Shown: positions 1,329 through 58,933 of the stretch, in pieces
Layout: each line of letters opens with the position of its first letter
Numbering within the stretch: the first letter of the stretch is position 1
IMG/VR virus record: IMGVR_UViG_3300005056_000001
Coordinates: 62,001 to 126,000 of that record
DNA: 64,000 nt
Direction: 5' to 3' (one strand)
Position numbers and translations under genes: made by a program
Notes under the pieces: generated by a model
The model's database searches: none
What the model was told of the DNA's origin: nothing
The model's input: only the letters and a program-made list of their open reading frames with translations

Positions 1329-1427
1329 GCTATCTGTTTGTTTTTATGATAATGCTAAGGTAGTAATTTTTGGATAGGTGCAAGTGTATTTGGTTATTTT
1401 AACAAAATATTAACACTTGGGATGTGT

Positions 1428-2069
1428 TTAAACGTTTCGAGTTCCGCAATCCTTAACGATAAACCTGTCAACACCCCATAGCTTTGTAAGATGTTTTTTG
1501 AGCATACTCACATTTTTAATTCGATGGCCAATCGTCCATGTCTTTCGTTCACCATTGTAGTCTGCAAAATACTTTGTACAGGTGCTACGTGTTGAACTGT
1601 AAGGTTTTGATTTCCACGACTCACGTATTTTGTACAACACAAGACTTCCATCAAGACTTTCGAATTTTAAATAATTTTTTGCCTCTACATTACCATTTTC
1701 TGCACGTTTTCTGAATTCATTCATAAACATAAGTCTTGAATTCTTTAACGTCCCAAACATAGCAGCAATAAGTTCTATATTTGTCATGTCTCTCACATCT
1801 TCCTTCTGTACAGTGTAATACTTGTATAGTCTATGCTCATTGTCTTCTACCTTGTCAACGTTGTCTACCGAAATTGGGTTACCACGTTCCATCGAAACCA
1901 AAACTAAGCGTGATTCGATTTCCTTGAACGTTTCAAAAAGAATATTTTTATTGCTCCATATTTCAGAAAGACTATCAACAAACTTACATACTTTTCTTAC
2001 TCTACCATCAACCAATGCTGATATTAAAAGAACGTAACCCACAGCCTCCAATATTTCTTGTTTTATCAT
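1428..2069 (-). CDS. hypothetical protein (213 aa)
   Basis: Long ORF co-oriented with neighbours; no recognised motif. Confidence 0.7.
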   Translation of the reverse strand: MIKQEILEAVGYVLLISALVDGRVRKVCKFVDSLSEIWSNKNILFETFKEIESRLVLVSMERGNPISVDNVDKVEDNEHRLYKYYTVQKEDVRDMTNIELIAAMFGTLKNSRLMFMNEFRKRAENGNVEAKNYLKFESLDGSLVLYKIRESWKSKPYSSTRSTCTKYFADYNGERKTWTIGHRIKNVSMLKKHLTKLWGVDRFIVKDCGTRNV

Positions 2070-2270
2070 TTCAATTTTTCTGCTTTAAACAAATTATCCT
2101 TCTTCCATACCATTAATATTTCATCAACAGTCCCTCTCTTGTGTTTTTCGGTGTTGTATGGTATTAGCTTTGGACTCCCTGCACCAAAAAAAATTGTCTC
2201 GAAGGAAATTCCCAAAATCTGAAACCAATAATAAAACCTCTTCTTCTGTGTATGAATCTTTGCCTTTCAT
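2066..2270 (-). pseudogene. small ORF apparently frameshifted at an A8/T8 tract
   Basis: ATG at 2268-2270 follows a promoter module. Removing one base of the A8 run (2186-2193) gives a 67-aa ORF (MKGKDSYTEEEVLLL..FKAEKLK) whose TGA overlaps the ATG at 2069. Confidence 0.45.
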
Positions 2271-2410
2271 TGTGATATGTTTTATATTCTGTTTTGTGAT
2301 AGCATAAAGATATTGAAAACAGTCCGAAATAAAAGAGTATTAAAAATTTTAACAAAATATTAACACTTGGTATAAAGATATATCCTCTTGTAACTAGCCC
2401 ACCCATACGA

Positions 2411-3022
2411 TCACAGGGTTGCTTTGTTCTTCTGAGAGTCAATAAAATCCTTGCTACTCATCCACCCACAATGCTCCATAGAATAAACCTCATCAACAGA
2501 CTCGATCAAAGGAAGACAGTGTGTGGCTATAAATAGTTGTGTGTTTGAATTAATGGCGGTATCAATCGACTTAATCAATTCGTATTGATTTCTCAAAGAC
2601 ATGGCTGATTCGGGTTCGTCAAAAAATGCAATGCAGTCTTTGAGCCTCCCAATGCCATTTACGGTAAATTCCTGAAGACATTCTCCGTGTGACATAAAAC
2701 GGGCACCAAGTGCGGCACCAACCCCAATACCAACACTTTGACCCAACGGATTTGAATAATTCTGCACATCCGCCATTCGTGGATTGTCTTTCTCGGCGTC
2801 AAAATAAAACATATCCACACCAACCGCATTTTCTGTTGAGGCAAATTGTAAAAACTTGGTGTTGTTGATATGTCCATTATCTCGAAGTAGGTGTAGAAGA
2901 CTTGACTTTCCACAGCCTTGGTCACCCACGATAAGGTTCAATTCTTTACAGTCGATTTCTAGGCCCTGTGTGAGGTTTCCGTGGTGGTTTTCTAGTAGTG
3001 TAATTCTTTTAATGTAGATCAT
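2411..3022 (-). CDS. ABC/AAA-type ATPase (COG3910-like)
   Basis: Walker A GDQGCGKS, signature-like MSHGE, Walker B FFDEPE, H-loop IATH. Confidence 0.85.
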   Translation of the reverse strand: MIYIKRITLLENHHGNLTQGLEIDCKELNLIVGDQGCGKSSLLHLLRDNGHINNTKFLQFASTENAVGVDMFYFDAEKDNPRMADVQNYSNPLGQSVGIGVGAALGARFMSHGECLQEFTVNGIGRLKDCIAFFDEPESAMSLRNQYELIKSIDTAINSNTQLFIATHCLPLIESVDEVYSMEHCGWMSSKDFIDSQKNKATL

Positions 3023-3044
3023 GTTTTGTTGTGTTGGTAATTGG

Positions 3045-3963: not shown

Positions 3964-4986
3964 TTAGATGTTAATTTTTGCTGTTGGGTGTGTTAGCTGT
4001 ATTTTTAGGTGTGTTAGGTTTGGTGTTAGGCTGTTGTTCTCTAAACCTAAAAACTCTAGATTAGCCAAACTATCAACGTTTGGCGGAGTCGTTAATTGAT
4101 TGCCGTCTAGATATAACCACTTTAAACTTACCAATCCTTCAAGTATTGGTGGCGCAGTTAATTGATTGTCGTCTAAGTGCAAATGTCTTAACATGACCAA
4201 GCCTTCAAGTATCGGTGAAATTGTTAGTCTATTGTGGTTCAGGAATAACCGATCCAACTTTATCAAACCTTCAAGTATTGGTGGGTGATTCAGCTTGTTG
4301 TCCTCTAAATCCAACCTCTCCAAATTGACTAGACCATCAAGTATCGGTGGACGGCTCAAACTGTTGGTTGTTAAATCCAAACGCTTCAACTGTATCAAAC
4401 CTCCAAGTATTGGAGGTTCTATTAGTCGATTGTAGCTCAGATCTAAAGCCTCTAACCTGTACAATCCATTAAGAACAGGCGGGAGTGTTAGTTTGTTGTG
4501 GTTAATGTACACATGCTCTAGATTGACCAACCCCCCAAGAATGGGCGGTGTCGTTAATTTGTTGTTGGTCAAGCTTAATTTCTTCAGCTTGACCAAGCCC
4601 TCGAGGCTTGGTGGTGTAGTTAATCTGTTGTTGCTTAACACCAACCTCTTTAGGTTTACCAAACCGTTAAGAATAGGCGATGTCGATGAGGTTAGTTTAT
4701 TGTTGCTCAGATATAACTGTTCCAAATTAACCAATCCATCAAGAATTACTATGTGCTTTAGGTTGTTGTTTAAGTATAAACGCTTCAGTCTGAAAACTTG
4801 CTCAATCTTACAAAATATATCATCCGTGGCTTTAACCTTGTCATTACACAGTAGGAATTTATAGGTGTCGAGTATGTTCGGAAACACACTCAACACATCC
4901 ACGTTCCCGTTGCGAAAATTAGCCATTGCAAGATCTATATTTACATCGTCGCCTGATACTAGGAGTTGTTTTATTTTATTGTTCAT
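3964..4986 (-). CDS. LRR protein, family A (12 modules)
   Basis: Start reset to the ATG at 4986 (MNNKIKQLL), just after the upstream stop; same caps; ends THPTAKINI. Confidence 0.95.
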   Translation of the reverse strand: MNNKIKQLLVSGDDVNIDLAMANFRNGNVDVLSVFPNILDTYKFLLCNDKVKATDDIFCKIEQVFRLKRLYLNNNLKHIVILDGLVNLEQLYLSNNKLTSSTSPILNGLVNLKRLVLSNNRLTTPPSLEGLVKLKKLSLTNNKLTTPPILGGLVNLEHVYINHNKLTLPPVLNGLYRLEALDLSYNRLIEPPILGGLIQLKRLDLTTNSLSRPPILDGLVNLERLDLEDNKLNHPPILEGLIKLDRLFLNHNRLTISPILEGLVMLRHLHLDDNQLTAPPILEGLVSLKWLYLDGNQLTTPPNVDSLANLEFLGLENNSLTPNLTHLKIQLTHPTAKINI

Positions 4987-4990
4987 TCTT

Positions 4991-5845
4991 TTAATCTTCC
5001 TTAAGGCTATACAAATCAAAAAATTTCACAAAATCAGCACAGTCCTCATTCGTTTTAAATTTTATTTCGGCTCCATTATTCGAGGCAAAAAATCGAATCG
5101 ACTTGACACAACTCTCCTTGTTTTCTAGCTTATAGGTCTGTATTACCATACTATCCCCGCTATTTTTTGGAATATCGGCATATAGTTCCGATATCACAGG
5201 AATCCCTGTCTCATACAGACTCAAGGCCCTAAGCAAGGCACGCAGTCTCCAACAACCGCTACTCTCTAGGGTGCTTTGATAAGTCCAAAGAGAATAAAGC
5301 CATACATCGGTTTTCAATGATTTACCTTTGATGTTCATTCTTTTTTGACTGTGTAAGACAGACTTTAAGTCTTCCTTGCACTTATGTACGCCGCTATCAA
5401 AAAGACCTTGTCCGTTTAATTGTTGGACATACACAGGAAGCAATTCGGTGGACAGATCCCTCATATTCACAAGCGTTGACTTTGTGTCACTGTCAATATT
5501 TAAATCAAGGTTATACGCATGGTTTAAGTATCTTGTGTATCTGTCAATGATGTCATAGACACGACACATGTGTATAATTTCCAAACGCTCGGACAGTTTA
5601 GAAAAATTATATTCCAAGACATCCTCCCTGTCGGAAACATCGTCACCCTTGATCCAAAATTTTTCGGGCGGGCAATTGTACTTGTGGAGCTCCATTAGTT
5701 GGTCAATATACTTTCTGTGGGCATCATTGGACTCGTTCAGCCCGTCCAAGTCGGCCTGAAGAATTGCCAAATATTCACGGTCTGACTTTGAGAAAATTGA
5801 TTTTTCTTCTAATTCAACATTTAAGATGTCGTTTAATAATGTCAT
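4991..5845 (-). CDS. hypothetical protein (284 aa)
   Basis: Long ORF. The C-terminus SIRFFASNNGAEIKF..DCADFVKFF resembles ends of proteins I recall beside methylase-helicase genes (unverified). Confidence 0.7.
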   Translation of the reverse strand: MTLLNDILNVELEEKSIFSKSDREYLAILQADLDGLNESNDAHRKYIDQLMELHKYNCPPEKFWIKGDDVSDREDVLEYNFSKLSERLEIIHMCRVYDIIDRYTRYLNHAYNLDLNIDSDTKSTLVNMRDLSTELLPVYVQQLNGQGLFDSGVHKCKEDLKSVLHSQKRMNIKGKSLKTDVWLYSLWTYQSTLESSGCWRLRALLRALSLYETGIPVISELYADIPKNSGDSMVIQTYKLENKESCVKSIRFFASNNGAEIKFKTNEDCADFVKFFDLYSLKED

Positions 5846-6235: not shown

Positions 6236-6381
6236 TTGATAGCACTAAGGTATGGAATAACATTCAAAAAACAAAATCGTTTTGTGGGAAATGTTGGTTT
6301 TAACGTTTTGTTAACGTTTTTTTGGTGGCTTTAGAGGGCTTTGTTGTGAACCCATCTTATTCCTTGATGGTGTATTGTGGG
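6236..6381 (-). repeat. about 145-bp direct repeat, copy 1 (promoter module)
   Basis: Near-identical to 6885-7029; contains TTAACGTTTTGTTAAC and, on the minus strand, TACCTTAGTGCTATCA. Confidence 0.95.
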
Positions 6382-6884: not shown

Positions 6885-7029
6885 TTGATAGCACTAAGGT
6901 ATGGAATAACATTAAATAAACAAAATCGTTTTGTGGAAAATATTGGCTTTAACGTTTTGTTAACGTTTTTGGTGGGTGGCTTTAGAGGGCTTTGTTGTGA
7001 ACACATCTTCCTTGATGGTGTATTGTGGG
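6885..7029 (-). repeat. about 145-bp direct repeat, copy 2 (promoter module)
   Basis: Near-identical to 6236-6381. Confidence 0.95.
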
Positions 7030-8001: not shown

Positions 8002-9000
8002 TTAAATATCAATATGTGCCGTAGGGTGTGTTGGTGTACTTGTTAGTTGGTTGTTCTCTAAATCTAAACGATCCAAATTAACTAAAGTATCAATGATTGG
8101 TGATGTCGTCAGTCGGTTGTTGTATAAGTACAAAGCTCTTAGATTGGTCAATAATTTAAGATTAGGTGGTGTAGTTAATTGGTTATCGCCCAAATCCAAC
8201 CACATCAACCCTACCAAACCTTCAATAATTGTTGTGTTGGTTAATCGGTTACAATTCAAATACAAACAAGTCAAGTTAATTACCCCCCTAAGATCAGGAG
8301 AGCTCGTCAATACGTTACTGCTCAAATCTAACCACACTAGGTTAACCAATCCTTCAAGAATTAGTGGTGTCGTCAGTCGGTTCTCGCTCAAATCCAAACG
8401 CTTCAATTTTGCTAAATTCATAAGCTTTGGTGGTGTCGTTAATCGGTTTCTGCCTAGGGTTAAACGCTCCAAATTCACTAACGTATTAAGTGTTGGTGAA
8501 TCTGTTAGTTTGTTACTGCCTAAGTTTAAACCCTTTAAATTAACCAATCCATCAACTATTGGCGGATTAGTCAGTTGGTTATTGGTCAAATATAGAACCT
8601 CTAACCTTACCAACTTATCAAGAATCGGCGAAGTGGTTAACTTGTTATTATTCAAGTATAACCGCTTTAAATTAACCAACCCTTCAAGTATTGGCGGATT
8701 CGTTAATTGGTTCTTCCCCAAGTCCAAAACCTCCAAATTAATCAATCCCTCAAGTATTGGCGGACTAGTTAGTCGGTTACTAACTAAACTTAATCGTTTC
8801 AATCTAAAAACCTGCTCAACCTTAGAAAATAAGTCATCCGTGGATTTTACCTTGGCGTGCCATAGCAAGAATTTATACGTGTCAAATATCCTAGGAAAAA
8901 TACTCAACACATCAACATTCCCATTACGAAAATTAGCCATTGCGAGTTCTATGTTTACATCGTCGCCCGTGGTTAGTAGTTGTTTTATTTGGTTGTGCAT
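8002..9000 (-). CDS. LRR protein, family A (12 modules)
   Basis: First ~125 nt nearly identical to those of the 7031-7972 gene; ends THPTAHIDI. Confidence 0.95.
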   Translation of the reverse strand: MHNQIKQLLTTGDDVNIELAMANFRNGNVDVLSIFPRIFDTYKFLLWHAKVKSTDDLFSKVEQVFRLKRLSLVSNRLTSPPILEGLINLEVLDLGKNQLTNPPILEGLVNLKRLYLNNNKLTTSPILDKLVRLEVLYLTNNQLTNPPIVDGLVNLKGLNLGSNKLTDSPTLNTLVNLERLTLGRNRLTTPPKLMNLAKLKRLDLSENRLTTPLILEGLVNLVWLDLSSNVLTSSPDLRGVINLTCLYLNCNRLTNTTIIEGLVGLMWLDLGDNQLTTPPNLKLLTNLRALYLYNNRLTTSPIIDTLVNLDRLDLENNQLTSTPTHPTAHIDI

Positions 9001-17332: not shown

Positions 17333-17376
17333 TATGTTTTTGTTTTGATTAATTTGATAATGTAATACTACAACAA

Positions 17377-17410
17377 AAAGGTCATACCCACAAGTGTGAG
17401 TATGACCTTT
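17377..17410 (-). terminator. rho-independent terminator
   Basis: AAAGGTCATAC..GTATGACCTTT stem with a minus-strand U-tract, after the gene ending at 17428. Confidence 0.75.
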
Positions 17411-17427
17411 AACATTTCCTTAACAGT

Positions 17428-18910: not shown

Positions 18911-19019
18911 AATATTTTTGGTGTTGTTTAATACTTACAATACTACGACCAATAAAATTAAAAAACAACAAAAACCGTTATTTTAACATTATTTTAACGG
19001 TTGTAAAAGTAAAAGAAAC

Positions 19020-21310: not shown

Positions 21311-21670
21311 ATGAAAGAATACAAAAAAATCGCAACCGCCAACATGTCAAAAGTCTTTTTGTCCTATCGGGAACGATTAAAGAAGCAGGACGACAACAAG
21401 ACAAGAAGCAGTCTTACCGATGCCACCGACTCGGCAATTTTGCATAATGACATCAAGGAGTCACTTCGTGAAAGCCTGTCTATGTATTTTGAACAATACA
21501 TTGGTCAAGTAATGAGCACAGAAATAAAAGAAGACATGAAACTTTTCGTAAAAATGTTGCTTGATTTTATCCAAATGAAGAATTTAGAGCATAAGATTAA
21601 CGCAAGTATCAAAAAAGGAATCAAGGACGGTGATTTACTTTCGCCTCTTACCGATAATATATGGTGTTAA
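21311..21670 (+). CDS. hypothetical protein (119 aa)
   Basis: ORF with A-rich leader. Confidence 0.7.
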   Translation: MKEYKKIATANMSKVFLSYRERLKKQDDNKTRSSLTDATDSAILHNDIKESLRESLSMYFEQYIGQVMSTEIKEDMKLFVKMLLDFIQMKNLEHKINASIKKGIKDGDLLSPLTDNIWC

Positions 21671-21763
21671 GGTTGTGTTAAATAATACAATCAAGAATGT
21701 GTTTCGGAAATATATTCGTAATATTGCATATTATCAAAACATAATAAAAGAACATCAATCATA

Positions 21764-22585
21764 ATGAAGAGCAAGAAAACACTAATAAAAGAATATATTG
21801 AACAGGATTATACAATAGGCGATCATGTCACTGTGCGTGGTTTAGACGTTAGCAATAAAGCGGCATGGGGACATTCTACGGATATCGTTGGTATTGGTTA
21901 TTGTGGCGTTTTTGTGCAACCATTTCCATACAAGGAGCCTATGTTTGTCAAGCTGTGCGACGTAATGAAAACAACCCGCCATATCGGCTATAACCCATTC
22001 CCCAAAAAACCTATTCGGGTTAGAAGCTTTGATATAGATATCGACATGCTGCTAAAGAGGTGTATGCCCGACACCACGAGCGAATATTTCACGGAAAAAA
22101 CAAATATGCCGATTCGTGTATGTAACCATGACCCTATTGTTATCGACAAGGATGGCAAGATCGTGACCTACCAAAGAGAGCTTTGTTGGAAACCATGGCA
22201 AAAAAAGGGTCTGATTGATTCTGTTTATGACGGAATGGATATCGGACTGTTTACTGTACGAAAACGTTTTTTCGATGAGCTCGATGTTCTTGCAAAAAGA
22301 GGTGTGGATGTTCTTGCGTTTAGCGATGTCGTGGACGGGAAGCAGCGTCTTAACACCCTCAAAGAATTTGTGGACGGGAAATTTAAGGACAATAACGGCA
22401 TGTATTACCATCAAATGTCCGACAATTCACAACACAAATTTATGAGCTGTATGAATTTTACATATGCAGAATTACCCGAAAATTCATTGGACAAGGATGT
22501 TATCGAACAGTTCCTTAAGGTCAACAACACGGGCGTTCCTGTGTCAAAGAAGCACATAAATTATGTCAAGGAAATAAATATATAG
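21764..22585 (+). CDS. DUF262 (ParB-like superfamily) domain protein
   Basis: YQRELCW..QKKGLIDSV..VVDGKQRLNTL, the DUF262 QR and DGQQR motifs. Confidence 0.85.
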   Translation: MKSKKTLIKEYIEQDYTIGDHVTVRGLDVSNKAAWGHSTDIVGIGYCGVFVQPFPYKEPMFVKLCDVMKTTRHIGYNPFPKKPIRVRSFDIDIDMLLKRCMPDTTSEYFTEKTNMPIRVCNHDPIVIDKDGKIVTYQRELCWKPWQKKGLIDSVYDGMDIGLFTVRKRFFDELDVLAKRGVDVLAFSDVVDGKQRLNTLKEFVDGKFKDNNGMYYHQMSDNSQHKFMSCMNFTYAELPENSLDKDVIEQFLKVNNTGVPVSKKHINYVKEINI

Positions 22586-28830: not shown

Positions 28831-28862
28831 CGGGTGTAAGATAATAATAATTTTTTGTTTAT

Positions 28863-34224: not shown

Positions 34225-36384
34225 ATGATAGACATAAAGATGGTGAGAATGCAAGAGTGGTCTGTGGGCGACAAGCCCTTGCGACACGTCACTAAAGTAC
34301 TAGGAAAGGTTGGAGTCCTGAATATCACACAGGCAGAAAACCTGATATGGAATCTGACACAGGTCATTAAATCTCACAATTGGTGCTATTCGGTAAAAAA
34401 TAGCCCTGTGATTTCGGATTCCGAATATGACGTGTTGTTTAACCGCCTTGTTGAGTTGGAACAAAAATATCCGTCATTGCTAAAGTCAGACTCTCCGACA
34501 CAAGGCGTTTCCGACGACAGCAATAACACCGACAAGTTCAAACATTTGAGTCCTATTTTGTCCCTTAAAAACTCTTATAACGAGGAAGACCTAAACAATT
34601 TCGACGACACCATAAGAAACATGGTAGGGTTTTCGGAGTTGCCTGTTATTGAATATTGTGTGGAACCAAAGTTTGATGGTGGCACAATCGTATTGGTATA
34701 CGAAAACGACGATTTGTTGCGTGGTGCCACAAGAGGTGACGGTATCAGCGGCGACAATATTAGTGTGACGGCAAATGCCATTGAGTCTATTCCTATGAAG
34801 GCATTGTTCTCCAAGTACGGAATACACAAGGCCGAGTTAAGGGGCGAGGCCATTATACAAAAAGACTTGTTTGTTGTCATAAACGAAAAAAGGGCAACAA
34901 AAGGAAAACAAATCTTTGCCAATCCACGAAATGCTGCCACAGGAGGACTACAGCTCAAGACATCTGCCGAGGTAAAAGAAAGAGGACTAACAGCATTTAT
35001 TTTCCAACTGAGCCATGCCGAGGACATAAACGGGAAGTGTATGCTTAATAAGTTCGGAACACACAACGAACTTGTGGATATGTTGTCTGATTTGGGATTT
35101 AAAGTGCCTGTGTATGGCATGGAGCGTCAGGTGTATAACAACATAACAGACGTCAACAAACATTGCCAAGAATGGGAACGTAAGCGTGAGGAATATCCGT
35201 TTGAGATTGATGGCATGGTCATAAAGGTTAATCTGTTGGGTCATCAAAAAACCTGTGGACACACCAATCACCACCCACGTTGGGCAATCGCCTATAAATT
35301 CAAGGCAAAGCAGGCAACCACAACATTGTTGGATGTCGAATACCAAATCGGACGAACAGGAGCAATAACCCCTGTCGGAAAACTAGAACCTGTTCAGTTG
35401 GCGGGTGTTACTATTTCGAGCGTGTCACTACACAATGCCGATTTCATACTCAAAAAAGGCTTGTTGATTGGCGACAAGATATTATTGGAACGTGCAGGCG
35501 ATGTGATTCCATACGTTGTCAAGCCACTGACAAAAATGCGTGACGGTACCGAAAAAGAAATTGTATTCCCCACGAATTGTATAAAATGCGACAGTGTTTT
35601 GGTGCGTCCAACGGGTGAGGCAATTTGGAGGTGTGAAAATACTTCCTGTGAAGGCAAAGTAATTAACAGCCTAATACATTTTGTGTCAAAGGATGCAATG
35701 GATATACAGGGCTTTGGGAAAAGCTATATCGAACGATTCTACAAGGAGGGCCTGTTGTCCAATATTACCGATATCTACAAATTGGACTATGTCGCCATCG
35801 AGTCTTTGTCGGGTTTTGGCAAAAAGTCGGTCGATAAATTAAAAATTGCCATCGAGCAAAGCAAATCAAAGACTTCTGCCCGATTATTATATGCACTAGG
35901 AATCAGATTCATAGGACGCACGGTTTCCAAGATACTAATGGGAGAGGTAAAACGAATTCAAGACCTCGAACATCTAACCATAGAGCAATTGATGTCTTTG
36001 GAGGATATTGGACATGTTGTGGGAGGACAAATAATCGAACACATGCGCAATCCACAAATATTGGACACCATCAACCAACTCGAACGGCTCGGTGTCAATG
36101 TATGGCAATTAGAGTCTGAAATGCCCGTGGTTGTCAATGTGGATGATCCTTTTAATGGTCTAACATTTTTGTTCACAGGGAAATTTGAAAAGATGTCCCG
36201 TGTCGAGGCAAAGAAGATGGTCGAGGACTTGGGCGGGAAAGCCTCTAGCGGTGTCAGTAAAAGCCTGAGTTATTTGGTTGTCGGCGAAAAGGCAGGATCA
36301 AAACTAAAAAAAGCAAAGGCACTTGGTGTGGATATTTTGTCGGAGTCCGAGTTTTTGGACATGATCACAAAACAAGGCAAATAA
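34225..36384 (+). CDS. ligA: NAD-dependent DNA ligase
   Basis: ISDSEYD (domain Ia), EPKFDG adenylation motif, ATRGDG, NPRNAA, EIDGMVIK, zinc finger, HhH repeats, C-terminal BRCT (FLFTGK..GEKAGSKLKKA). Confidence 0.98.
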   Translation: MIDIKMVRMQEWSVGDKPLRHVTKVLGKVGVLNITQAENLIWNLTQVIKSHNWCYSVKNSPVISDSEYDVLFNRLVELEQKYPSLLKSDSPTQGVSDDSNNTDKFKHLSPILSLKNSYNEEDLNNFDDTIRNMVGFSELPVIEYCVEPKFDGGTIVLVYENDDLLRGATRGDGISGDNISVTANAIESIPMKALFSKYGIHKAELRGEAIIQKDLFVVINEKRATKGKQIFANPRNAATGGLQLKTSAEVKERGLTAFIFQLSHAEDINGKCMLNKFGTHNELVDMLSDLGFKVPVYGMERQVYNNITDVNKHCQEWERKREEYPFEIDGMVIKVNLLGHQKTCGHTNHHPRWAIAYKFKAKQATTTLLDVEYQIGRTGAITPVGKLEPVQLAGVTISSVSLHNADFILKKGLLIGDKILLERAGDVIPYVVKPLTKMRDGTEKEIVFPTNCIKCDSVLVRPTGEAIWRCENTSCEGKVINSLIHFVSKDAMDIQGFGKSYIERFYKEGLLSNITDIYKLDYVAIESLSGFGKKSVDKLKIAIEQSKSKTSARLLYALGIRFIGRTVSKILMGEVKRIQDLEHLTIEQLMSLEDIGHVVGGQIIEHMRNPQILDTINQLERLGVNVWQLESEMPVVVNVDDPFNGLTFLFTGKFEKMSRVEAKKMVEDLGGKASSGVSKSLSYLVVGEKAGSKLKKAKALGVDILSESEFLDMITKQGK

Positions 36385-38201: not shown

Positions 38202-38284
38202 AAGTGTTAAAATTTTGTTAAAATATCCATTATTCTTTGATGGTGTCTAAATAAACACGTACTTGGTGTTATTAAATAATCAAA
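38202..38284 (+). repeat. 83-bp direct repeat, copy 1 (promoter module)
   Basis: Near-identical to 40319-40401; its 3' part (CTTGGTGTTATTAAATAATCAAA) also precedes the gene at 37512. Confidence 0.95.
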
Positions 38285-40320: not shown

Positions 40321-40401
40321 GTGTTAATATTTTGTTAAAATTGTCATTATTCTTTGATGGTGTCTAAATAAACACGTACTTGGTGTTATTAAATAATCAA
40401 A
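40319..40401 (+). repeat. 83-bp direct repeat, copy 2 (promoter module)
   Basis: Near-identical to 38202-38284. Confidence 0.95.
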
Positions 40402-44330: not shown

Positions 44331-45422
44331 ATGGAAACCAACACAAAAACACCGACAGTAACAGTAAACCTAGACAGCAGCGAAATGTCAAATGTTATCC
44401 TGCACAAGGTAGGAAACAAGTCAATGGACGAGGGAATGCGTATTGCAACAAACGAGCTAAAAATGACCGATGGTCTGAATGAGTCGTTGTTTAGCTATTT
44501 TGTAGGAGGATTTAAATTCGACACATTGTATGAGTTTACGGATGAGCACGACCTTTCTATGAATTCGGTATTCAAGATTTGCAAGAGAATCTTTGAAGAA
44601 ACAGACAAGGAACAAAATTTTTACAAAGGCTCTATTGATATCCTTAGACACCTCTATGATATGTCAAACAATCCCACCATTAAAGGAGGCGATCTGTATG
44701 TTGCATATTTCAATAATTGCGACTGTGACGGTGAATCGACTGATGCTATCGGAATTTTCAAGGCCGACAAGCGTGTCAATTTTGTTAATCCGAAATTTGA
44801 CGAGGACGAGAATGAATGGGCCGTGGATATTCGTGAGGGATTCGACATGACAAAAATCGACAAGGGTTGTATTATCTTCAACACCCAAGCCGAAACAGGA
44901 TATCGTATTGCCAACATCAAACTAAAAGGATTAATGGCAAGTGCATGGAATTTGGATTTCATGAACATTTCCCGTGTACAGGACGATTCTTACCAAACAC
45001 AGGTCTACATGGATATGTGCAAAGATTTTGCCAACAAGGCCTACAAAGAAGACAACAAAGACGTAAAGGTTGACTTCCTGAATCGTACCAAGGATTATTT
45101 CGAAAACTACAAAGAACATACCGACGAGGATTTCAAGGAAGTGGTGTTCGAGGACTCTGAAAAGAAAGAAGCCTTTGCGGAGCATGTCACCGAGACACGT
45201 GACAGCCTAGAACTTGAGGACGAAGACAACGGCGAATTCTTGATCTGTGCCAACACGGTAAAGAAGGCCAAAAAAGGATTCAAAAACAATATTCTGCTAG
45301 ACACCGAGGTGGAGATTAAAATCTTGTCTTCACAGGCGGTTTCTGATGGGTATGTTGAGCGTGGACACGACGACGAAAAGGACATGGACTTCTACAAGGT
45401 TTATTTTAACAGCGAGAAATAG
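44331..45422 (+). CDS. nucleoid-associated protein (37-kDa NdpA/YejK-like, Bacteroidota type)
   Basis: ILHKVGNK, LYDMSNNPTIKGGDLYVAYF, AIGIFK.D, IDKGCIIFN, W..DF, I.LD..IEIKI..ERGHDDEK..FYKVYF. Confidence 0.85.
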   Translation: METNTKTPTVTVNLDSSEMSNVILHKVGNKSMDEGMRIATNELKMTDGLNESLFSYFVGGFKFDTLYEFTDEHDLSMNSVFKICKRIFEETDKEQNFYKGSIDILRHLYDMSNNPTIKGGDLYVAYFNNCDCDGESTDAIGIFKADKRVNFVNPKFDEDENEWAVDIREGFDMTKIDKGCIIFNTQAETGYRIANIKLKGLMASAWNLDFMNISRVQDDSYQTQVYMDMCKDFANKAYKEDNKDVKVDFLNRTKDYFENYKEHTDEDFKEVVFEDSEKKEAFAEHVTETRDSLELEDEDNGEFLICANTVKKAKKGFKNNILLDTEVEIKILSSQAVSDGYVERGHDDEKDMDFYKVYFNSEK

Positions 45423-51711: not shown

Positions 51712-51753
51712 AACAACAATAAATAACTTTCCACAAAACGTTAAAATTATGTT

Positions 51754-51788
51754 AAAGTCCTGCACATTTATTGTGTAGGACTTTTTTT
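51754..51788 (+). terminator. rho-independent terminator embedded in a promoter module
   Basis: AAAGTCCTGCACA / TGTGTAGGACTTT stem followed by a T-run. Confidence 0.8.
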
Positions 51789-51846
51789 ATTCGGATTTTA
51801 TTTGTAATATTGGGGTATCAATTAATAACGACATTAAACAACAACA

Positions 51847-53111: not shown

Positions 53112-53804
53112 ATGAAGGACTCCGACAAGCTACTCAATCTAATAAATTCGGGTGTAAAGGAAAATATTGAGCTCGCCTTTCAGTTGCACAAATCCAATGG
53201 TATACCATTGGATTTGTGGGCATGGTCAGAACTTGCCGAATGGCTGTATAAATATCGACTAATAAAATCCTACAAGTCGTTGGAAGAGGCGATTGTTAAG
53301 ATTTTCGACATACGAGAGGTATATGTGACAAGTGATTTACTAGAAAACATAACAGAGCATATCGGTCTTATGGTCGGCTTGGAATGTATTAGTTTTATAT
53401 CCAAGAAGGTAACCACACTGCCCGATAGTATATCAAAACTAACACACCTAAAATATATCATCCTATACGGTTGCAATATAAAAACCCTGCCAAAATCCAT
53501 GTCAATGCTCACGAATCTTGTTAGTATTGACATGGATAGCAATGGAATGAAAGATCTACCCTCCGAAGTCTGTGATATCCCTAACCTTGAGAATTTGGAG
53601 ATTAGGTTCAACGATTTAACAACACTCCCCAAGAACATTGGAAATTTAAAAAAGCTAAAAAAGCTAAAACTTCAGGGCAATAAAATGGCGGTTCTTCCGA
53701 AATCTATTTGTATGCTACAATCACTAAAAGGACTTATGGCCAACGATACCTATATCACAATTGACGAGTTGGTACCCGATCAGGATGTGATTCTATTGTG
53801 TTAA
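53112..53804 (+). CDS. LRR protein, family B
   Basis: LINSGVKENIELAFQL cap; 23-aa repeats. Confidence 0.92.
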   Translation: MKDSDKLLNLINSGVKENIELAFQLHKSNGIPLDLWAWSELAEWLYKYRLIKSYKSLEEAIVKIFDIREVYVTSDLLENITEHIGLMVGLECISFISKKVTTLPDSISKLTHLKYIILYGCNIKTLPKSMSMLTNLVSIDMDSNGMKDLPSEVCDIPNLENLEIRFNDLTTLPKNIGNLKKLKKLKLQGNKMAVLPKSICMLQSLKGLMANDTYITIDELVPDQDVILLC

Positions 53805-53901
53805 TGTTTTGTTAAGACGCATTGGTTTTGGTGATATATTTTGTTTATTCGGATTTTATTTGTAATATTGTACTATCAATTAATGATTAACAAACAAGGA
53901 T

Positions 53902-54615
53902 ATGGTAACCACGGAACAACAAGAAGACATAGACAAGATAACATCACTCTTAAAATCGGGTGATAGTGCCAATATAGAGCTTGCATTCATGCTTATAAGT
54001 TCTAATAAATTAAGGATTTGTTTGTGGGCATGGGGCGACCTATCTGTGTATTTGCGAAACCATGGCGATTTGGGCAAATACAAAACATTCAATGATGGCA
54101 TTAGGAGAATAGGAGAAATGCGTGAACTCGCATTAAGACAAGGAAACCTTCACGGATTAGGTTCTTGTTTTTCATTCATGCCTTATTTGACAGGGCTTCA
54201 TTTGACACAATACAAGGACATAACACTTCCCGAAAATATAACAGAAATACACAATCTTAAATATATCGTTTTTGATGGATGTATAATAGAATCCTTGCCC
54301 AAAGGAATATCCACATTAAAAAACATTGTTCGTATAGACATTGACTGTCATAATATGAATGCGCTCCCGAAAGGAATATGCACCATCCCCAATCTTGAGA
54401 CATTGACCATTAGATTTAGCAAGCTCACAAGCCTCCCAAATAATATTGGAGACCTAAAACACCTTAAAAAGTTGGTGATTGACGGCAAACAAATCGAGTC
54501 ACTTCCTGAATCCATCAACCGCCTAGGAAACTTGACGGAAATTATTGTCAAGAATGGCATTGTCGATATTAGTAATTTGGCTCCTAATATAATTGACTTG
54601 ATTAAAACTGCTTAG
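53902..54615 (+). CDS. LRR protein, family B
   Basis: LLKSGDSANIELAFML cap; 23-aa repeats. Confidence 0.92.
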   Translation: MVTTEQQEDIDKITSLLKSGDSANIELAFMLISSNKLRICLWAWGDLSVYLRNHGDLGKYKTFNDGIRRIGEMRELALRQGNLHGLGSCFSFMPYLTGLHLTQYKDITLPENITEIHNLKYIVFDGCIIESLPKGISTLKNIVRIDIDCHNMNALPKGICTIPNLETLTIRFSKLTSLPNNIGDLKHLKKLVIDGKQIESLPESINRLGNLTEIIVKNGIVDISNLAPNIIDLIKTA

Positions 54616-54618: not shown

Positions 54619-55320
54619 ATGAAGGACACACAAAAGATATGGGACTTGATCTATACGGCCCAAGAAGTAAATATAAACCTTGCGTTTACCTTGGCAGAGG
54701 CCAAAGGAATAGCATTAGATTTAAGTGCGTATCACGAGATTTTCGGGTGGTTACAGACCCATGAAACCGAGACTACAGAACATAAATCAGACCTAGAAAT
54801 ATTGATATATGTATTGACACTAGAAACGGTGACAGTGCCCTGTAAAGGACTGACCGAAATACCAAAATCAATAGGAAAACTTAGATCGCTTAAATGTCTT
54901 ATTTTGGGGTGGAATAAATTGACATACCTTCCTGATTCAATCGGAGAATTGAGCAACCTAGGAATGTTGCATGTCTTAGGAAACAAACTCACAAACCTGC
55001 CCGACACAATCGGGAATCTAACATTATTAGAATATCTATACGTTGGCGGTAACCAATTAACAGAACTTCCCGAAACGATTGGTGGTCTTAAAAATCTAAC
55101 AGAATTGTGCGTCAATAATAATAGATTGGAAACCATTCCAAAGACTATACTAAACCTAAAATATTTAGAAAAGATTGACATCAAAATGAACAACATAAAA
55201 GATATTCCTGACAGGCTTGGTTATCTTCCAAACCTGCGATGGTTACATCTTGGCAAAAAAGTATCCGAGAAGGTGAAAAACAACCTTACAAGCAACAAGA
55301 ACACAAATTGGTATGACTGA
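54619..55320 (+). CDS. LRR protein, family B
   Basis: LIYTAQEVNINLAFTL cap; LPDSIGEL-type repeats. Confidence 0.92.
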   Translation: MKDTQKIWDLIYTAQEVNINLAFTLAEAKGIALDLSAYHEIFGWLQTHETETTEHKSDLEILIYVLTLETVTVPCKGLTEIPKSIGKLRSLKCLILGWNKLTYLPDSIGELSNLGMLHVLGNKLTNLPDTIGNLTLLEYLYVGGNQLTELPETIGGLKNLTELCVNNNRLETIPKTILNLKYLEKIDIKMNNIKDIPDRLGYLPNLRWLHLGKKVSEKVKNNLTSNKNTNWYD

Positions 55321-56437
55321 TCAACAAAAGATAATGTGTCTTATTAAGACAGGAGATTTGACCAACATAAAAATGGGTCTTATGATGGCCAAATCAAACA
55401 AAATTGATTTGGACTTGTCCGAATATTGGGCCATACATCATTTTTTGGTTGTGTACAAAGAGTTGAAGCCTGCAAAAAATGATTACCACATGCTTGTATT
55501 GTTAATGGGCGTGACACACCTACACTTACACGATATCAGGATACTGCATATTCCTGAATCCTTTGGTTGTCTTCATAATCTAAAAACTTTTGGTATTAGA
55601 AACGCAGGAATTAGTAGCCTTCCTGATTCTATCGGTAATCTCAAAAACTTGGACAGTATTAGGATATCACGCACAAACCTAACACATCTCCCTGAATCAA
55701 TATGCGCAATCACAGGGTTGGTCACTATATTTATAGAGGACAATAGTCTGTCTTGTCTGCCAAAAGACATTGGTAATCTGACCAATATTAAACGCCTGAT
55801 GATTATTGAGGAAAATATCAAAACGCTTCCCGAATCCATAGGGAATATGTCGGCATTGGAAAATCTGTCAATTCAAAATTGCTTTCTTGAAAGTCTTCCT
55901 GAATCAATAGGCGATTTACAGGGCTTGTGTGTGTTGTATTTAGAAGGAAATAAACTCACAACAATACCCAAAACCATAGGCAAATTACAAAAATTGGAAT
56001 TATTAAAAGTTTCTGATAATTTGTTACAATCGCTTCCTGATACGTTATTCGACCTAATTAATTTGCGTCATTTAAGCGCAATGAAATGTGGTTTAGAAGA
56101 CCTACCAAAAGACATTGGCAGACTAATCAATCTTGAGTATCTAGGGCTTGGTGGTAATAAACTAACTTCCTTGCCAAAAAGCATTGCCAAGCTGTCTAAA
56201 ATGGAGACTCTGATTTTGGCAAGGAACGAAATAAGCATGTTCCCCAAGGAAATAACCTCACTAAGCAAACTAAAATATCTAAGACTCCGTTTTAACAACA
56301 TAAAACAATTCCCAAAAGAAATAGTCAATTTAAAAGAATTAATTAGTCTATCGGTAGACATGAATCCTGCAACATACGAACATATATGTTGGCTCATAGA
56401 TATATTGCCACACACAAATATTAATTACAGAAACTAA
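55313..56437 (+). CDS. LRR protein, family B (longest, ~13 repeats)
   Basis: LIKTGDLTNIKMGL cap; LPESIGxL repeats. Confidence 0.93.
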   Translation: MTDQQKIMCLIKTGDLTNIKMGLMMAKSNKIDLDLSEYWAIHHFLVVYKELKPAKNDYHMLVLLMGVTHLHLHDIRILHIPESFGCLHNLKTFGIRNAGISSLPDSIGNLKNLDSIRISRTNLTHLPESICAITGLVTIFIEDNSLSCLPKDIGNLTNIKRLMIIEENIKTLPESIGNMSALENLSIQNCFLESLPESIGDLQGLCVLYLEGNKLTTIPKTIGKLQKLELLKVSDNLLQSLPDTLFDLINLRHLSAMKCGLEDLPKDIGRLINLEYLGLGGNKLTSLPKSIAKLSKMETLILARNEISMFPKEITSLSKLKYLRLRFNNIKQFPKEIVNLKELISLSVDMNPATYEHICWLIDILPHTNINYRN

Positions 56438-56443
56438 AAAAAT

Positions 56444-56845: not shown

Positions 56846-56884
56846 TTTCCACCCGAAAGAAAATCAAATTTACAATAGGCCCTT

Positions 56885-58189
56885 GTGTCTCAAAATATAA
56901 ATATGTTCAAAGGAAGAGAATACAACAAAAAATCAAAACCGTATGTTTATTATCATGCCCGATTTGTCTCCAACGATAATGCATGGTGTGTGCAGGCATA
57001 CAACCGTGACCACATGGACGAGATTATTTGTAGAAACAAGAAAAATGAGGAGGCCTATATAAAAGGACGGACTCATTCGTTTAAAACAGACGAAAATTAT
57101 GAATGGCGTTATCTGAGGATCCCGCATATCTATACGTTTTCCATGGAAAAATGTCTGATAGTACACAAACGGGTATTGTTTGAAACCGAGGAAGAGGCAA
57201 AAAGCTTTATAATCGAATATGAAAACTTTTGTGGGCCTCTTGACTCGATTTGTCCAAGGTATAATCGTGGATCAAAAATAGTGGATGACAACATCAGGTC
57301 AAGTATGTTCCTGTACTTGGATTATGACATTAACCACAACAAATTTTTGGTGGACAATAATTTGTCAAGCGAAGACGAATTTACAAACCACAACAAAAAA
57401 CTTTTCTCGGTTGCCCTGCTTGGTGGAAGGCTTGTTTATGTGAACCTGACGGATGTTGTTGGATACAACATTGATGGGGGGAAAATGCTTCCGTATTTTA
57501 TGTGGAGCGAAGACCTCGACCGTTTGGTTGCTATGTCATACGACAGCCCGCTACTTCGAGAGACCGTTTATTACAAAACCAAACAAAGGGAAGGATTTTT
57601 CAACAGGCTGTTTGGTATCAAAGAAAAAATTGCCACAAAATTCAGGGGGTATTATATTAAACATACTCCAACCTTCCTAGAAGATCCATTAAGCTTTACG
57701 GGTGACACAAGGATGTGTGAATTTATACGTTGTGCCTACAAGTTTAAGGATTTTAAGGACTATGAGGGGTATGGTCTAACGTGTGGGTACGAAGGTTTTA
57801 ATGAGTCGGTACAGACGCTTTATACGGACATAGGAAACCTTCAACAATTATTGACCAACATTCAGCTATGTGAGCGTTTTAATTCATCCGAAGTAATCTA
57901 TAATAGTTGTAGGATATATGCGGCCATGGGACAGTCGGGTGGTTGCCATATAAACCAAGAAATTAGTTACTACACAAAAAACTTTAGTAAGCCCGTCAAG
58001 GAGCATGGTATAAAGTTCATTTTTGATGTTGGGAGTCCTAGATACAAGGATGTCTGTTCGGGCAAGCAAGGCATAAACACAACAGGAGAACTAGATTTCA
58101 AATACGGCACCGAGGCATATCTGTACAGGGACACTCTTGACGAGCTGTATAGAATTATTGACGAAAAAAAATTTAATATATTACAATAA
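56885..58189 (+). CDS. hypothetical protein (434 aa)
   Basis: Long ORF; no motif recognised. Confidence 0.75.
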   Translation: MSQNINMFKGREYNKKSKPYVYYHARFVSNDNAWCVQAYNRDHMDEIICRNKKNEEAYIKGRTHSFKTDENYEWRYLRIPHIYTFSMEKCLIVHKRVLFETEEEAKSFIIEYENFCGPLDSICPRYNRGSKIVDDNIRSSMFLYLDYDINHNKFLVDNNLSSEDEFTNHNKKLFSVALLGGRLVYVNLTDVVGYNIDGGKMLPYFMWSEDLDRLVAMSYDSPLLRETVYYKTKQREGFFNRLFGIKEKIATKFRGYYIKHTPTFLEDPLSFTGDTRMCEFIRCAYKFKDFKDYEGYGLTCGYEGFNESVQTLYTDIGNLQQLLTNIQLCERFNSSEVIYNSCRIYAAMGQSGGCHINQEISYYTKNFSKPVKEHGIKFIFDVGSPRYKDVCSGKQGINTTGELDFKYGTEAYLYRDTLDELYRIIDEKKFNILQ

Positions 58190-58249
58190 AATTTAATATA
58201 TTACAATAAATTTAATATATTACAATAAATTTAATATATTACAATAAAA
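58172..58249 (+). repeat. 4 x 19-20-bp tandem repeat TTTAATATATTACAATAAA(A)
   Basis: Copies start at 58172, 58192, 58211 and 58230; the first spans the stop codon of the upstream gene. Confidence 0.95.
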
Positions 58250-58257
58250 TTAAAATT

Positions 58258-58839
58258 ATGATAGACAGGATATATTCTAGCCATTGGATGTTTATGGTGT
58301 TTTTCTTATTATTCATGAGCAACCCAATGTTCTTGGGTGTCAATAGTGATTGGACATTAAATAATGTTTTTTGGGTATGTATGATCGTAAACATCATTTT
58401 TTTTATATACACACGGAACGAATGGAGGAATAATCTAAGACCCGAAAAGCGAATAGTAATAGTTAAGGCCATGGCTAGTATATCCATTGTGTTTTCAATA
58501 GGATTTATTTGTTATAGCATAATTCATTTACCTATTGCACCACTAGGACTATACGTTTTTATACCCTTTACTTTTGTGTATTATATGATATATCATGTGT
58601 GTCTGACATGGGATATATTTAAAGCGAATATAACATATGCTCATGGCAAGATATTTATAATTTCATGTTTTCTTATTTGTTGGTATATATTCAGGATACG
58701 TTTTTTCTTTCCGCCCTTTGAATACAAGTCAAGCCTGATTTTTTCAATACTAAATATATTATTACTTCTTTTTTTGATATATCCTATTACATTGGTACCA
58801 CCAAAAGAAATAGAACTGATTGATCATTTGGTCGAGTAA
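58258..58839 (+). CDS. integral membrane protein (193 aa, ~6 TM)
   Basis: Almost entirely hydrophobic helices. Confidence 0.8.
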   Translation: MIDRIYSSHWMFMVFFLLFMSNPMFLGVNSDWTLNNVFWVCMIVNIIFFIYTRNEWRNNLRPEKRIVIVKAMASISIVFSIGFICYSIIHLPIAPLGLYVFIPFTFVYYMIYHVCLTWDIFKANITYAHGKIFIISCFLICWYIFRIRFFFPPFEYKSSLIFSILNILLLLFLIYPITLVPPKEIELIDHLVE

Positions 58840-58933
58840 TCATTAATGAAATGTTAAAAATTATCAAAAGGAGCCCAATAATTTGGTTTATAACTCTTGT
58901 TGTTGTAATATTGTTCTAACAAAAACAAACAAC

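What the first reader, a model, noticed from the sequence alone, without database searches (positions are those of the whole stretch)
1399..58857. Twelve-site GTTAA-N6-GTTAA box phased to promoters: a likely phage regulon
Seen: 11-bp-period direct repeats at 1399, 2349, 6300, 6949, 17409 and 18983 (minus sense) and at 21666, 38206, 40323, 51740, 53800 and 58842 (plus sense; the last has ATTAA as first half). They always lie upstream of and co-oriented with a gene. They sit 37-39 or 48-50 bp (one helical turn more) before a TAnn(A/T)TT-like element often followed by nnnTATCA. Established: Bacteroidota housekeeping promoters use TAnnTTTG at -7, and OmpR/PhoB-family dimers bind 11-bp-period direct repeats (cyanobacterial Pho boxes contain TTAA cores). 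Inference: one host or phage activator, possibly nutrient-responsive, controls these accessory modules, including several LRR genes.
Basis: partly seen in the sequence, partly recalled or inferred. Interest (0 to 1): 0.62.

Follow-up and report, generated by a model that had tools for sequence, protein, structure and literature searches.

The report
Phased GTTAA-repeat upstream promoter element
The repeated GTTAA-N6-GTTAA box is a real upstream part of host-type promoters in a 368-kb Bacteroidota jumbo phage, and the same box occurs in many unrelated Bacteroidota phages and in front of bacterial RprY-like two-component operons, so it is most likely a docking site for a host response regulator, not a phage-specific regulon.

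Summary
There are 11 exact sites and 1 near-exact site in the window (0.47 expected). The whole 368-kb phage genome has 32 exact sites, and only the N6 spacing is enriched. Thirty-one sites are intergenic and co-oriented with the next gene. They end 36-38 or 47-49 nt before a Bacteroidota -7 box (TAnnTTTG-like).

The element is not specific to this phage. The same box at the same distances occurs in hundreds of unrelated viral contigs, with counts peaking at gaps of about 25, 36 and 47 nt and dropping at about 30 and 41. One of these phages is Bacteroides phage B124-14, whose promoter is a standard constitutive tool in uninfected Bacteroides.

In Bacteroidota chromosomes the box is rare. It is strikingly concentrated at the promoters of histidine-kinase/response-regulator operons whose regulator is RprY-like (OmpR family): 16 of 28 loci carry it upstream and 0 of 28 downstream.

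Best reading: an upstream activating site for a host RprY-clade response regulator, which phages use to build strong promoters. The main rival is an UP element read by the RNA polymerase alpha subunit. A Pho or nutrient regulon and a phage-encoded activator are not supported. No binding or transcript-start data were available.

The parts
1355..1414 (-). Promoter module: box 1399-1414, -7 box TACCTTAG 1355-1362, ATG at 1328 (gene of 988 aa in the whole genome)
   Evidence: gap 36, TTG 21 nt before the box
2305..2364 (-). Promoter module: box 2349-2364, -7 box TATCTTTA 2305-2312, ATG at 2270 (48-aa ORF)
   Evidence: gap 36
6245..6315 (-). Promoter module: box 6300-6315, -7 box TACCTTAG 6245-6252, ATG at 6216 (123 aa). 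Paralogous with the 6949 module
   Evidence: gap 47
6894..6964 (-). Promoter module: box 6949-6964, -7 box 6894-6901, ATG at 6865 (135 aa)
   Evidence: gap 47
17363..17424 (-). Promoter module: box 17409-17424, -7 box TAGTATTA 17363-17370, ATG at 17332 (70 aa)
   Evidence: gap 38
17374..17408 (-). Terminator-like hairpin (30 nt, -20.1 kcal/mol) plus T-run, lying between the box and the -7 box. The loop holds the -33 TTG
18938..18998 (-). Promoter module: box 18983-18998, -7 box TAGTATTG 18938-18945, ATG at 18910 (157 aa). The upstream neighbour is divergent
   Evidence: gap 37
21666..21726 (+). Promoter module: box 21666-21681, -7 box TAATATTG 21719-21726, ATG at 21764 (273 aa, GmrSD_N domain)
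   Evidence: gap 37
38206..38267 (+). Promoter module: box 38206-38221, -7 box TACTTGGT 38260-38267, ATG at 38296 (93 aa). Paralogous with the 40323 module
   Evidence: gap 38
40323..40384 (+). Promoter module: box 40323-40338, -7 box 40377-40384, ATG at 40413 (145 aa)
   Evidence: gap 38
51740..51812 (+). Promoter module: box 51740-51755, -7 box TAATATTG 51805-51812, ATG at 51847 (187 aa)
   Evidence: gap 49
51756..51789 (+). Terminator-like hairpin (27 nt, -17.1 kcal/mol) plus T-run, directly after the box
53800..53870 (+). Promoter module: box 53800-53815 (its first TAA is the stop codon of the upstream gene), -7 box TAATATTG 53863-53870, ATG at 53902 (237 aa, LRR)
   Evidence: gap 47
58842..58913 (+). 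Promoter module with a degenerate box ATTAA-N6-GTTAA at 58842-58857, -7 box TAATATTG 58906-58913, ATG at 58934 (148 aa)
   Evidence: gap 48. It is the only 1-mismatch site in the genome that lies in register

Best explanation
Each box is the upstream activating element of a host-type (Bacteroidota sigma-A, -33 TTG / -7 TAnnTTTG) promoter. It consists of two head-to-tail units (consensus about AAnTGTTAAA) spaced 11 bp apart. Taking the -7 'TA' as about -11, the units are centred near -51 and -62 in this phage, or one helical turn further upstream (about -62 and -73). In other phages the positions run from -40/-51 to -62/-73.

The most likely reader is a host OmpR/PhoB-family response regulator of the RprY clade, which binds as a tandem dimer on one face of the helix and recruits or stabilises RNA polymerase. 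The phage has placed this site in front of about 31 transcription units. Most of these are small ORFan or accessory genes, and the site often shares the short intergenic gap with the terminator of the preceding gene.

Shown: the site statistics, the phasing, conservation across phages and bacteria, and the association with RprY-like operons. Inferred: that the regulator binds the box, that binding activates transcription, and where transcripts start.
For: Site statistics.

Phasing to the -7 box in this genome.

Independent sites inside the fetched viral loci show the same pattern: N6 spacing 65 times against 2-19 for other spacings, and gaps peaking at 26-27 and 37. A relative with 70% identical terminase keeps the box 36 nt before TATATTTG.

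The pentamers are invariant (2.0 bits at 9 of the 10 pentamer positions, 1.8 at the first G) across 24 sequence clusters. Some phages carry 3-4 tandem units at 11-bp period. A unit of 7 conserved plus 4 variable bp is what is established for OmpR/PhoB winged-helix regulators. The E. coli ArcA box is ATGTTAAAAA repeated at 11 bp centre to centre, with 2-5 repeats (PMC4173790).

The bacterial sites are concentrated at RprY-like two-component operons. Five of 26 in-register sites in five genomes lie there. Seven of 10 RprY-like operons in those genomes carry tandem GTTAA, one of them spaced N5, and four further genomes-worth of operons do too. In 28 fresh RprY-like loci, 16 have a same-strand tandem GTTAA (N5-6) 1.3-2.0 kb upstream of the regulator gene, which is where the promoter of a preceding kinase gene would lie; the upstream gene was confirmed as a kinase only in the earlier loci. 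None of the 28 has one in the 2.5 kb downstream.

From the literature: RprY binds its own promoter (PMC5706477), and rprXY was the only two-component system scored essential in B. fragilis (PMC4072883). This fits a promoter that behaves as constitutive.

No phage factor is needed: a B124-14 promoter carrying the box drives sgRNAs in uninfected B. thetaiotaomicron, and this phage has no OmpR-type domain and no detectable multisubunit RNA polymerase.
Against: The two highest-scoring true RprY operons (Hallella L435/L451 and G038 L463) lack a tandem repeat. The nqrA promoters, a published RprY target, show no tandem repeat in two genomes. Units at two-component operons are often GGTTAAT and spaced N5, whereas the phage uses YGTTAA(A) spaced N6 only, so a paralogue or a different reader is possible. 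The RprY-clade recognition helix (RSMDV[YF]I..LRK) differs from that of ArcA, so the ArcA resemblance does not transfer specificity. Bacterial genes behind TGTTAAA-type boxes are diverse, and many are autoregulated repressors, which also fits a general promoter-strength element. Others have labelled this region of the B124-14 promoter 'UP elements'.
Confidence: 0.5

Rival explanations
1. The box is a Bacteroidota version of the UP element. The two units are subsites for the two alpha-subunit C-terminal domains of host RNA polymerase, giving strong factor-independent promoters.
For: The unit positions (-40/-51, -51/-62, -62/-73) step by one helical turn, as alpha-CTD subsites do in E. coli (established knowledge). 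The B124-14 promoter is constitutive in several Bacteroides species, and its upstream region has been called 'UP elements'. Bacterial instances precede unrelated genes, many with their own operator between the box and the -7 box.
Against: It does not explain why tandem GTTAA repeats concentrate at RprY-like two-component operon promoters. rRNA promoters in five genomes lack the canonical box; the only case, a Flavobacterium with GTTAA-N5-GTTAA, is half a turn out of register. Invariant G-containing pentamers and arrays of up to 4 units are atypical for alpha-CTD minor-groove recognition. The exact box is very rare in bacterial genomes: 22 of 201 genomes, about 41 sites.
Confidence: 0.28
2. A phage-encoded transcription factor or polymerase recognises the box and defines a temporal class private to this phage (the 'phage regulon' reading).
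For: All 31 sites precede phage genes, mostly ORFans. The genome has at least one other conserved promoter class, so temporal classes probably exist.
Against: The same box and register occur in hundreds of unrelated phage contigs with GC from 25 to 43% and in bacterial chromosomes. The promoters have host-type -7 boxes. The genome has no OmpR-type domain and no multisubunit RNA polymerase. A promoter carrying the box works without any phage.
Confidence: 0.05
3. The box is a Pho box or another nutrient-responsive response-regulator site, so these modules respond to starvation.
Against: None of the 25 Pfam families listed for the 87 bacterial downstream proteins is phosphate-related; the singleton families beyond that list were not shown. 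The associated regulators are RprY-like, not PhoB-like, and none of the 10 non-RprY OmpR-family loci (PhoB-, CopR- and RpaB-like) carried the repeat within the DNA fetched. A promoter carrying the box is used as a constitutive promoter in rich medium.
Confidence: 0.04
4. The box belongs to the terminator of the upstream gene, or is an RNA-level signal at transcript 3' ends, and is not a promoter element.
For: In this phage the box starts 0-50 nt after the upstream stop codon. In about 14 of 32 sites a strong hairpin plus T-run follows it immediately.
Against: The distance to the -7 box is fixed whether or not a hairpin is present. One site has a divergent upstream gene. In other phages the terminator lies upstream of the box. 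Bacterial instances have no upstream co-directional gene requirement.
Confidence: 0.03

Closest known systems
Bacteroides phage B124-14 promoter (the engineered P_BfP1E6 family and the sgRNA promoter used in B. thetaiotaomicron)
   Same: B124-14 has four promoters with GTTAA-N6-GTTAA 36-37 nt before T(T)ATATTTG. One of them is printed as the sgRNA promoter in PMC13634575. It has the same box, the same register and the same host-type -7 box.
   Different: In the literature the upstream region is only labelled 'UP elements' (the original paper was not held here). No reader protein, consensus or helical phasing is given in anything I could read. This window adds 12 members, 31 genome-wide, in a jumbo phage, many of them fused to a terminator hairpin.
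E. coli ArcA-P binding sites (OmpR/PhoB family)
   Same: The consensus is ATGTTAAAAA repeated at 11 bp centre to centre, with 2-5 direct repeats at 11- or 22-bp steps (PMC4173790). That is almost the same unit, period and array behaviour.
   Different: ArcA is a gammaproteobacterial protein and acts mostly as a repressor that overlaps promoters. The Bacteroidota RprY-like regulators have a different recognition helix. Here the sites lie upstream of the core promoter.
RprX/RprY two-component system of Bacteroides and Porphyromonas
   Same: It is an OmpR-family regulator conserved in the phylum. It binds its own promoter (PMC5706477) and is essential in B. fragilis (PMC4072883). RprY-like operons in Flavobacteriia, Sphingobacteriia and other groups carry tandem GTTAA at their promoters.
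   Different: I could read no published RprY recognition sequence. In P. gingivalis RprY is described both as a repressor and as an activator of nqrA. The two best RprY orthologue operons examined lack the tandem repeat.
UP element of E. coli rrnB P1 (alpha-CTD subsites)
   Same: It is an upstream element with two subsites one helical turn apart, and it boosts strong promoters, including phage early promoters (established knowledge).
   Different: The UP element is degenerate and A/T-rich, whereas this box has invariant GTTAA pentamers. It is not found at Bacteroidota rRNA promoters in register.
PeSL (promoter-early stem-loop) cassettes of T4-type phages (from memory, not checked here)
   Same: These are short repeated intergenic cassettes that combine a stem-loop terminator and a host-type promoter between small ORFan genes. 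A five-member and a two-member cluster of near-identical cassettes exist here.
   Different: Here the order is box, then hairpin, then -7 box, with the -33 TTG inside the hairpin loop. No evidence for cassette-mediated recombination was sought.

Membership tests
Bacteroidota sigma-A promoter (-33 TTG / -7 TAnnTTTG) | A TAnnTTTG-like box shortly upstream of a gene and co-oriented with it | tested here: met
   All 12 window sites have such a box 20-37 nt before the ATG. Genome-wide result.
Bacteroidota sigma-A promoter (-33 TTG / -7 TAnnTTTG) | TTG about 19-23 nt upstream of the -7 box | tested here: met
   A TTG lies 21-23 nt upstream (26 in one) in 9 of 12 window sites. In hairpin-bearing cassettes it sits in the loop.
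Bacteroidota sigma-A promoter (-33 TTG / -7 TAnnTTTG) | Transcript start a few nt downstream of the box | not testable with these tools
The only indirect evidence is the design of the B124-14 sgRNA promoter.
OmpR/PhoB-family response-regulator site | Head-to-tail direct repeats with a 10-11 bp period, each unit having a conserved core followed by variable bases | tested here: met
   N6 spacing only; information profile; 3-4-unit arrays in other phages.
OmpR/PhoB-family response-regulator site | Fixed helical register relative to the core promoter | tested here: met
   Gaps of about 25, 36 and 47 nt are enriched, and gaps of about 30 and 41 nt are depleted by at least 12- to 60-fold.
OmpR/PhoB-family response-regulator site | The same repeat at the regulator's own operon (autoregulation signature) | tested here: met
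   For RprY-like operons, 16 of 28 carry it upstream and 0 of 28 downstream. None was seen at the 10 other OmpR-family loci, but the promoters were not fully covered there.
OmpR/PhoB-family response-regulator site | Direct binding of the regulator to the box | not testable with these tools
   Needs EMSA, DAP-seq or ChIP.
Pho box / phosphate regulon | Sites precede phosphate-acquisition genes and the regulator is PhoB | tested here: not met
   None of the 25 families listed for the 87 downstream proteins is Pho-related. The window genes are ORFans, LRR or GmrSD_N. The linked regulators are RprY-like, not PhoB-like.
UP element (alpha-CTD) | Present in register at the strongest housekeeping promoters (rRNA) | tested here: not met
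   No canonical box is found upstream of 16S genes in five genomes. The Flavobacterium P1 promoter has GTTAA-N5-GTTAA at gap 42, out of register.
UP element (alpha-CTD) | Stimulation by RNA polymerase alone through alpha-CTD | not testable with these tools
   Needs in vitro transcription with wild-type and alpha-CTD-truncated polymerase.
ArcA regulon site | An ArcA orthologue with the same recognition helix in the host phylum | tested here: not met
   The best Bacteroidota hits are 28-36% identical, and the helix differs: RSMDV[YF]I against RTVDVTI.
T4-type PeSL cassette | A repeated stem-loop plus host promoter cassette between small genes | tested here: inconclusive
   Hairpins of -10 to -22 kcal/mol occur at about 14 of 32 sites. 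There is one cluster of five near-identical cassettes. Recombination junctions were not examined.

The most novel reading that the evidence does not exclude
GTTAA direct repeats at 10-11 bp period are the so far undescribed recognition box of the RprY clade of response regulators, conserved across the whole phylum Bacteroidota. Phages of many unrelated lineages, from 30-kb siphoviruses to this 368-kb jumbo phage, have converged on placing this box one to four helical turns upstream of the -7 box, so that their transcription depends on an essential host signalling protein. The 'UP elements' of the widely used Bacteroides phage promoter would then be RprY sites.
Probability: 0.4. Interest if true: 0.72.

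Novelty: new member of a known kind. Interest (0 to 1): 0.55.

Why it matters
Transcription signals of Bacteroidota are poorly charted beyond the -33/-7 elements, and no binding motif for the essential RprXY system appeared in anything I could read. A defined, strictly phased 16-bp box would have three uses. It would give a handle for annotating phage promoters in gut and marine viromes. It would explain why the B124-14 promoter is so strong, and how to tune it. It would also make the RprY regulon directly testable. For this phage it marks about 31 transcription units, probably a common, strongly expressed class of accessory genes.

Tried and rejected
- DNA similarity of the window to known phages gave no match.
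- Literature: no paper held here links GTTAA or TGTTAAA to Bacteroidota promoters. The original P_BfP1E6 paper (PMC5576361) is not held. The RprY papers that could be read give no motif.
- The rRNA promoter test for a general UP element was negative or ambiguous.
- nqrA promoters, as known RprY targets, showed no tandem repeat.
- An ArcA-like recognition helix in Bacteroidota was not found.
- The conserved Sphingobacteriia leader behind motif promoters has no Rfam family.
- Rejected readings: a phage-encoded OmpR-type factor or RNA polymerase, a Pho box, a terminator-linked or RNA-level signal, and pure DNA curvature, because the N6 spacers are A-rich in some sites and T-rich in others while the pentamers stay invariant.
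- Not used, because the question did not depend on them: the large protein searches, structure prediction and complex prediction.


Full report
**What the window is.** The window is bases 62,001-126,000 of a single 368,109-bp contig. IMG/VR classes the contig as a complete virus with direct terminal repeats. It has 38% GC, uses the standard genetic code and is about 89% coding. It encodes a large terminase. Inside the window it encodes an SbcCD-like nuclease-ATPase, an NAD-dependent DNA ligase, a 37-kD nucleoid-associated protein homologue and several leucine-rich-repeat proteins. So it is a jumbo phage. Its promoters are of the Bacteroidota type, as shown below.

**The observation.** GTTAA-N6-GTTAA occurs 11 times in the window against 0.47 expected, and none of 100 shuffles reached 11. 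With one mismatch allowed, the count (19) is near chance (11.6 expected).
- In the whole genome there are 32 exact sites at spacing N6 and 0-3 at every other spacing from 0 to 15.
- Thirty of the 32 are intergenic and point at the next gene, whose ATG follows 70-117 nt later.
- In 29 of those 30 the preceding gene is co-directional and ends 0-50 nt (up to about 140 nt in the 6300/6949 paralogue pair) before the box.
- The remaining two exact sites (genome 141547 and 319567, both outside the window) have no promoter context.

**Register with the core promoter.** A TAnnTTTG-like box starts 36-38 nt (25 sites) or 47-49 nt (6 sites) after the box. A TTG lies about 21-23 nt before it in most sites.
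- About 14 sites have a strong hairpin (-10 to -22 kcal/mol) plus a T-run wedged between the box and the -7 box, and the TTG sits in the hairpin loop. This reads as the terminator of the upstream gene overlapping the next promoter.
- The spacing from the box to the -7 box is the same with or without a hairpin. One site has a divergent upstream neighbour. In other phages the terminator lies upstream of the box. The box therefore belongs to the promoter and not to the terminator.
- The 31 sites fall into 24 clusters by their downstream 75 nt. Across them the pentamers are invariant, while the spacer and flanks vary.

**Not private to this phage.**
- A relative with a 70% identical terminase has the box 36 nt before TATATTTG at three sites.
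It gave 44 stretches at 46-48, but only 2 at 29-31 and 10 at 40-42. That is a clear 11-bp helical periodicity.
- The contigs range from 25 to 43% GC and from 30 kb to 380 kb. Some carry three or four tandem units.
- Sites in those loci other than the ones used to fetch them show the same N6 preference and the same gaps.
- One of the contigs is Bacteroides phage B124-14, which has four such promoters. One of these four is printed as the sgRNA promoter of a B. thetaiotaomicron CRISPRi library (PMC13634575). A preprint describes 'UP elements' in the derived P_BfP1E6 promoter.
- A promoter carrying the box is thus strong in uninfected cells. That sgRNA construct places the transcript start about 3-4 nt after the -7 box, which puts the units of this phage near -51/-62 or -62/-73.

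**In bacteria.**
- The exact box is nevertheless rare per genome. Twenty-two of 201 sampled genomes have it in register, with about 41 sites against about 8 for the backwards control. This phage has about 30 in 0.37 Mb.
- In five genomes, 13 of 26 box-plus-(-7-box) matches have a gap of 37-38 nt.
- The downstream genes are diverse: 86 Pfam families in 87 proteins. The commonest are autoregulated repressors (TetR, PadR, DeoR, GntR), which have their own palindromic operator between the box and the -7 box.
- No listed family is phosphate-related. rRNA promoters do not carry the box in register.

**The lead to a reader protein.** Five of the 26 sites in those five genomes lie at the promoters of histidine-kinase plus OmpR-family regulator operons.
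- The best NCBIfam match of these regulators is RprY, at 208-306 bits, below the 370-bit equivalog cut-off, so they are RprY-like and not proven orthologues.
- Seven of the 10 RprY-like operons in those genomes carry two or three tandem GTTAA units ending 25-37 nt before a -7 box. One is a Pedobacter operon with TGTTAAA units spaced N5.
- None of the 10 other OmpR-family loci did, within the DNA fetched.
- Four more such operons turned up in three other genomes.
- In a fresh set of 28 RprY-like loci from 17 genomes, 16 have a same-strand tandem GTTAA (N5 or N6) 1.3-2.0 kb upstream of the regulator gene, where the promoter of a preceding kinase gene would lie. None has one in the 2.5 kb downstream, and opposite-strand hits occur in only one locus.
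- This is the classical signature of an autoregulated response regulator. RprY is reported to bind its own promoter (PMC5706477). rprXY was the only two-component system found essential in B. fragilis (PMC4072883).
- The unit and period also match the E. coli ArcA box (PMC4173790). The RprY-clade recognition helix differs from ArcA's, so that resemblance is only an analogy.

**Caveats.**
- The two best true RprY orthologue operons and two nqrA promoters lack a tandem repeat.
- Units at two-component operons are often GGTTAAT and spaced N5, whereas the phage uses YGTTAA(A) spaced N6.
- The diversity of bacterial targets also fits a general promoter-strength element.
- The alpha-CTD (UP element) reading therefore remains a serious rival.
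- A phage-encoded reader is unlikely: this genome has no OmpR-type domain and no multisubunit polymerase, the box is shared by unrelated phages, and a promoter carrying it is active without any phage.
- No reads could be laid, so transcript starts, terminator function and timing are all inferred.

**Verdict.** The finding is real and well described. The 'phage regulon' and 'nutrient-responsive' parts are not supported. The window's sites are new members of an upstream-element promoter class already in practical use through the B124-14 promoter. The wider claim, a phylum-wide RprY box adopted by phages, is the novel and testable part.

Noticed in passing
G000:C1 11088(-), 11476(-), 157652(+), 158975(+), 173834(-), 175324(-), 176349(-), 177331(-); all outside the window: A second conserved promoter class in the same phage. 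The palindrome TTACGTAAAACTTGCGTAA is centred on the -33 TTG and followed by CTTGTTGTAGATT(T/C)G. There are eight near-identical copies, which probably form a separately regulated (operator-controlled) temporal class.
   Followed up: partly
window 17374-17408 and 51756-51789; genome-wide about 14 sites: Terminator-like hairpins lie between the box and the -7 box, with the -33 TTG in the hairpin loop. One cluster of five near-identical cassettes of about 75 nt ends in TATATTTGTAAGGCAATCA. This resembles the T4-type promoter-early stem-loop cassettes.
   Followed up: partly
L147, L209, L214 (Bacteroidales MAG contigs): Runs of 8-11 G lie directly between the box and the -7 box. Slipped-strand changes there would shift the box out of helical register, so these may be phase-variable promoters.
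   Followed up: no
L127, L132, L150, L157, L176, L188, L190, L195, L197, L217, L218, L226, L235 (Sphingobacteriia): Directly after motif-bearing promoters lies a conserved short transcript or leader, AGGTTTATAATTGGTTAG followed by a terminator hairpin. Ten of these loci were searched and none matches an Rfam family. It may be an undescribed small RNA or attenuator.
   Followed up: partly
L248-L252 (Flavobacterium sp. W1B, upstream of five of its six 16S genes): The most upstream rRNA promoter has GTTAA-N5-GTTAA followed by an A-run, 42 nt before TAGTTTTG. That is half a helical turn off the phage register. Its meaning is unclear.
   Followed up: partly
G003:C1:1893433 and similar sites in G019, G029, G054, G058, G102, G130, G154, G194: A conserved Flavobacteriaceae promoter has the box followed by two copies of the palindrome TTAAACA-N3-4-GTTTAA before a TAnnTTTG box. 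The downstream gene was not identified.
   Followed up: no
window 24700-28866(-), 34225-36384(+), 44331-45422(+), 3964-5019(-), 8002-9000(-), 53902-54615(+), 55313-56437(+), 21764-22585(+): Gene content of the window: a 1388-aa Metallophos + AAA_23 (SbcCD-like) fusion, an NAD-dependent DNA ligase, a 37-kD nucleoid-associated protein homologue, four leucine-rich-repeat proteins and a GmrSD_N-domain protein.
   Followed up: partly
G000:C1:260799-261152(-): A 117-aa ORF gives a weak Sigma70_r2 match (19.6 bits, below the cut-off). It may be a small phage sigma-like factor.
   Followed up: no
window 6245-6315 with 6894-6964, and 38206-38267 with 40323-40384: These are pairs of near-identical promoter modules, including the 3' end of the preceding gene. 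They indicate recent tandem duplication of gene-plus-promoter units.
   Followed up: partly
L454 (G007 nqrA upstream): The palindrome GTTAATTAAC lies just downstream of the -7 box of the nqrA promoter. It could be a repressor-type site for the same regulator family.
   Followed up: no
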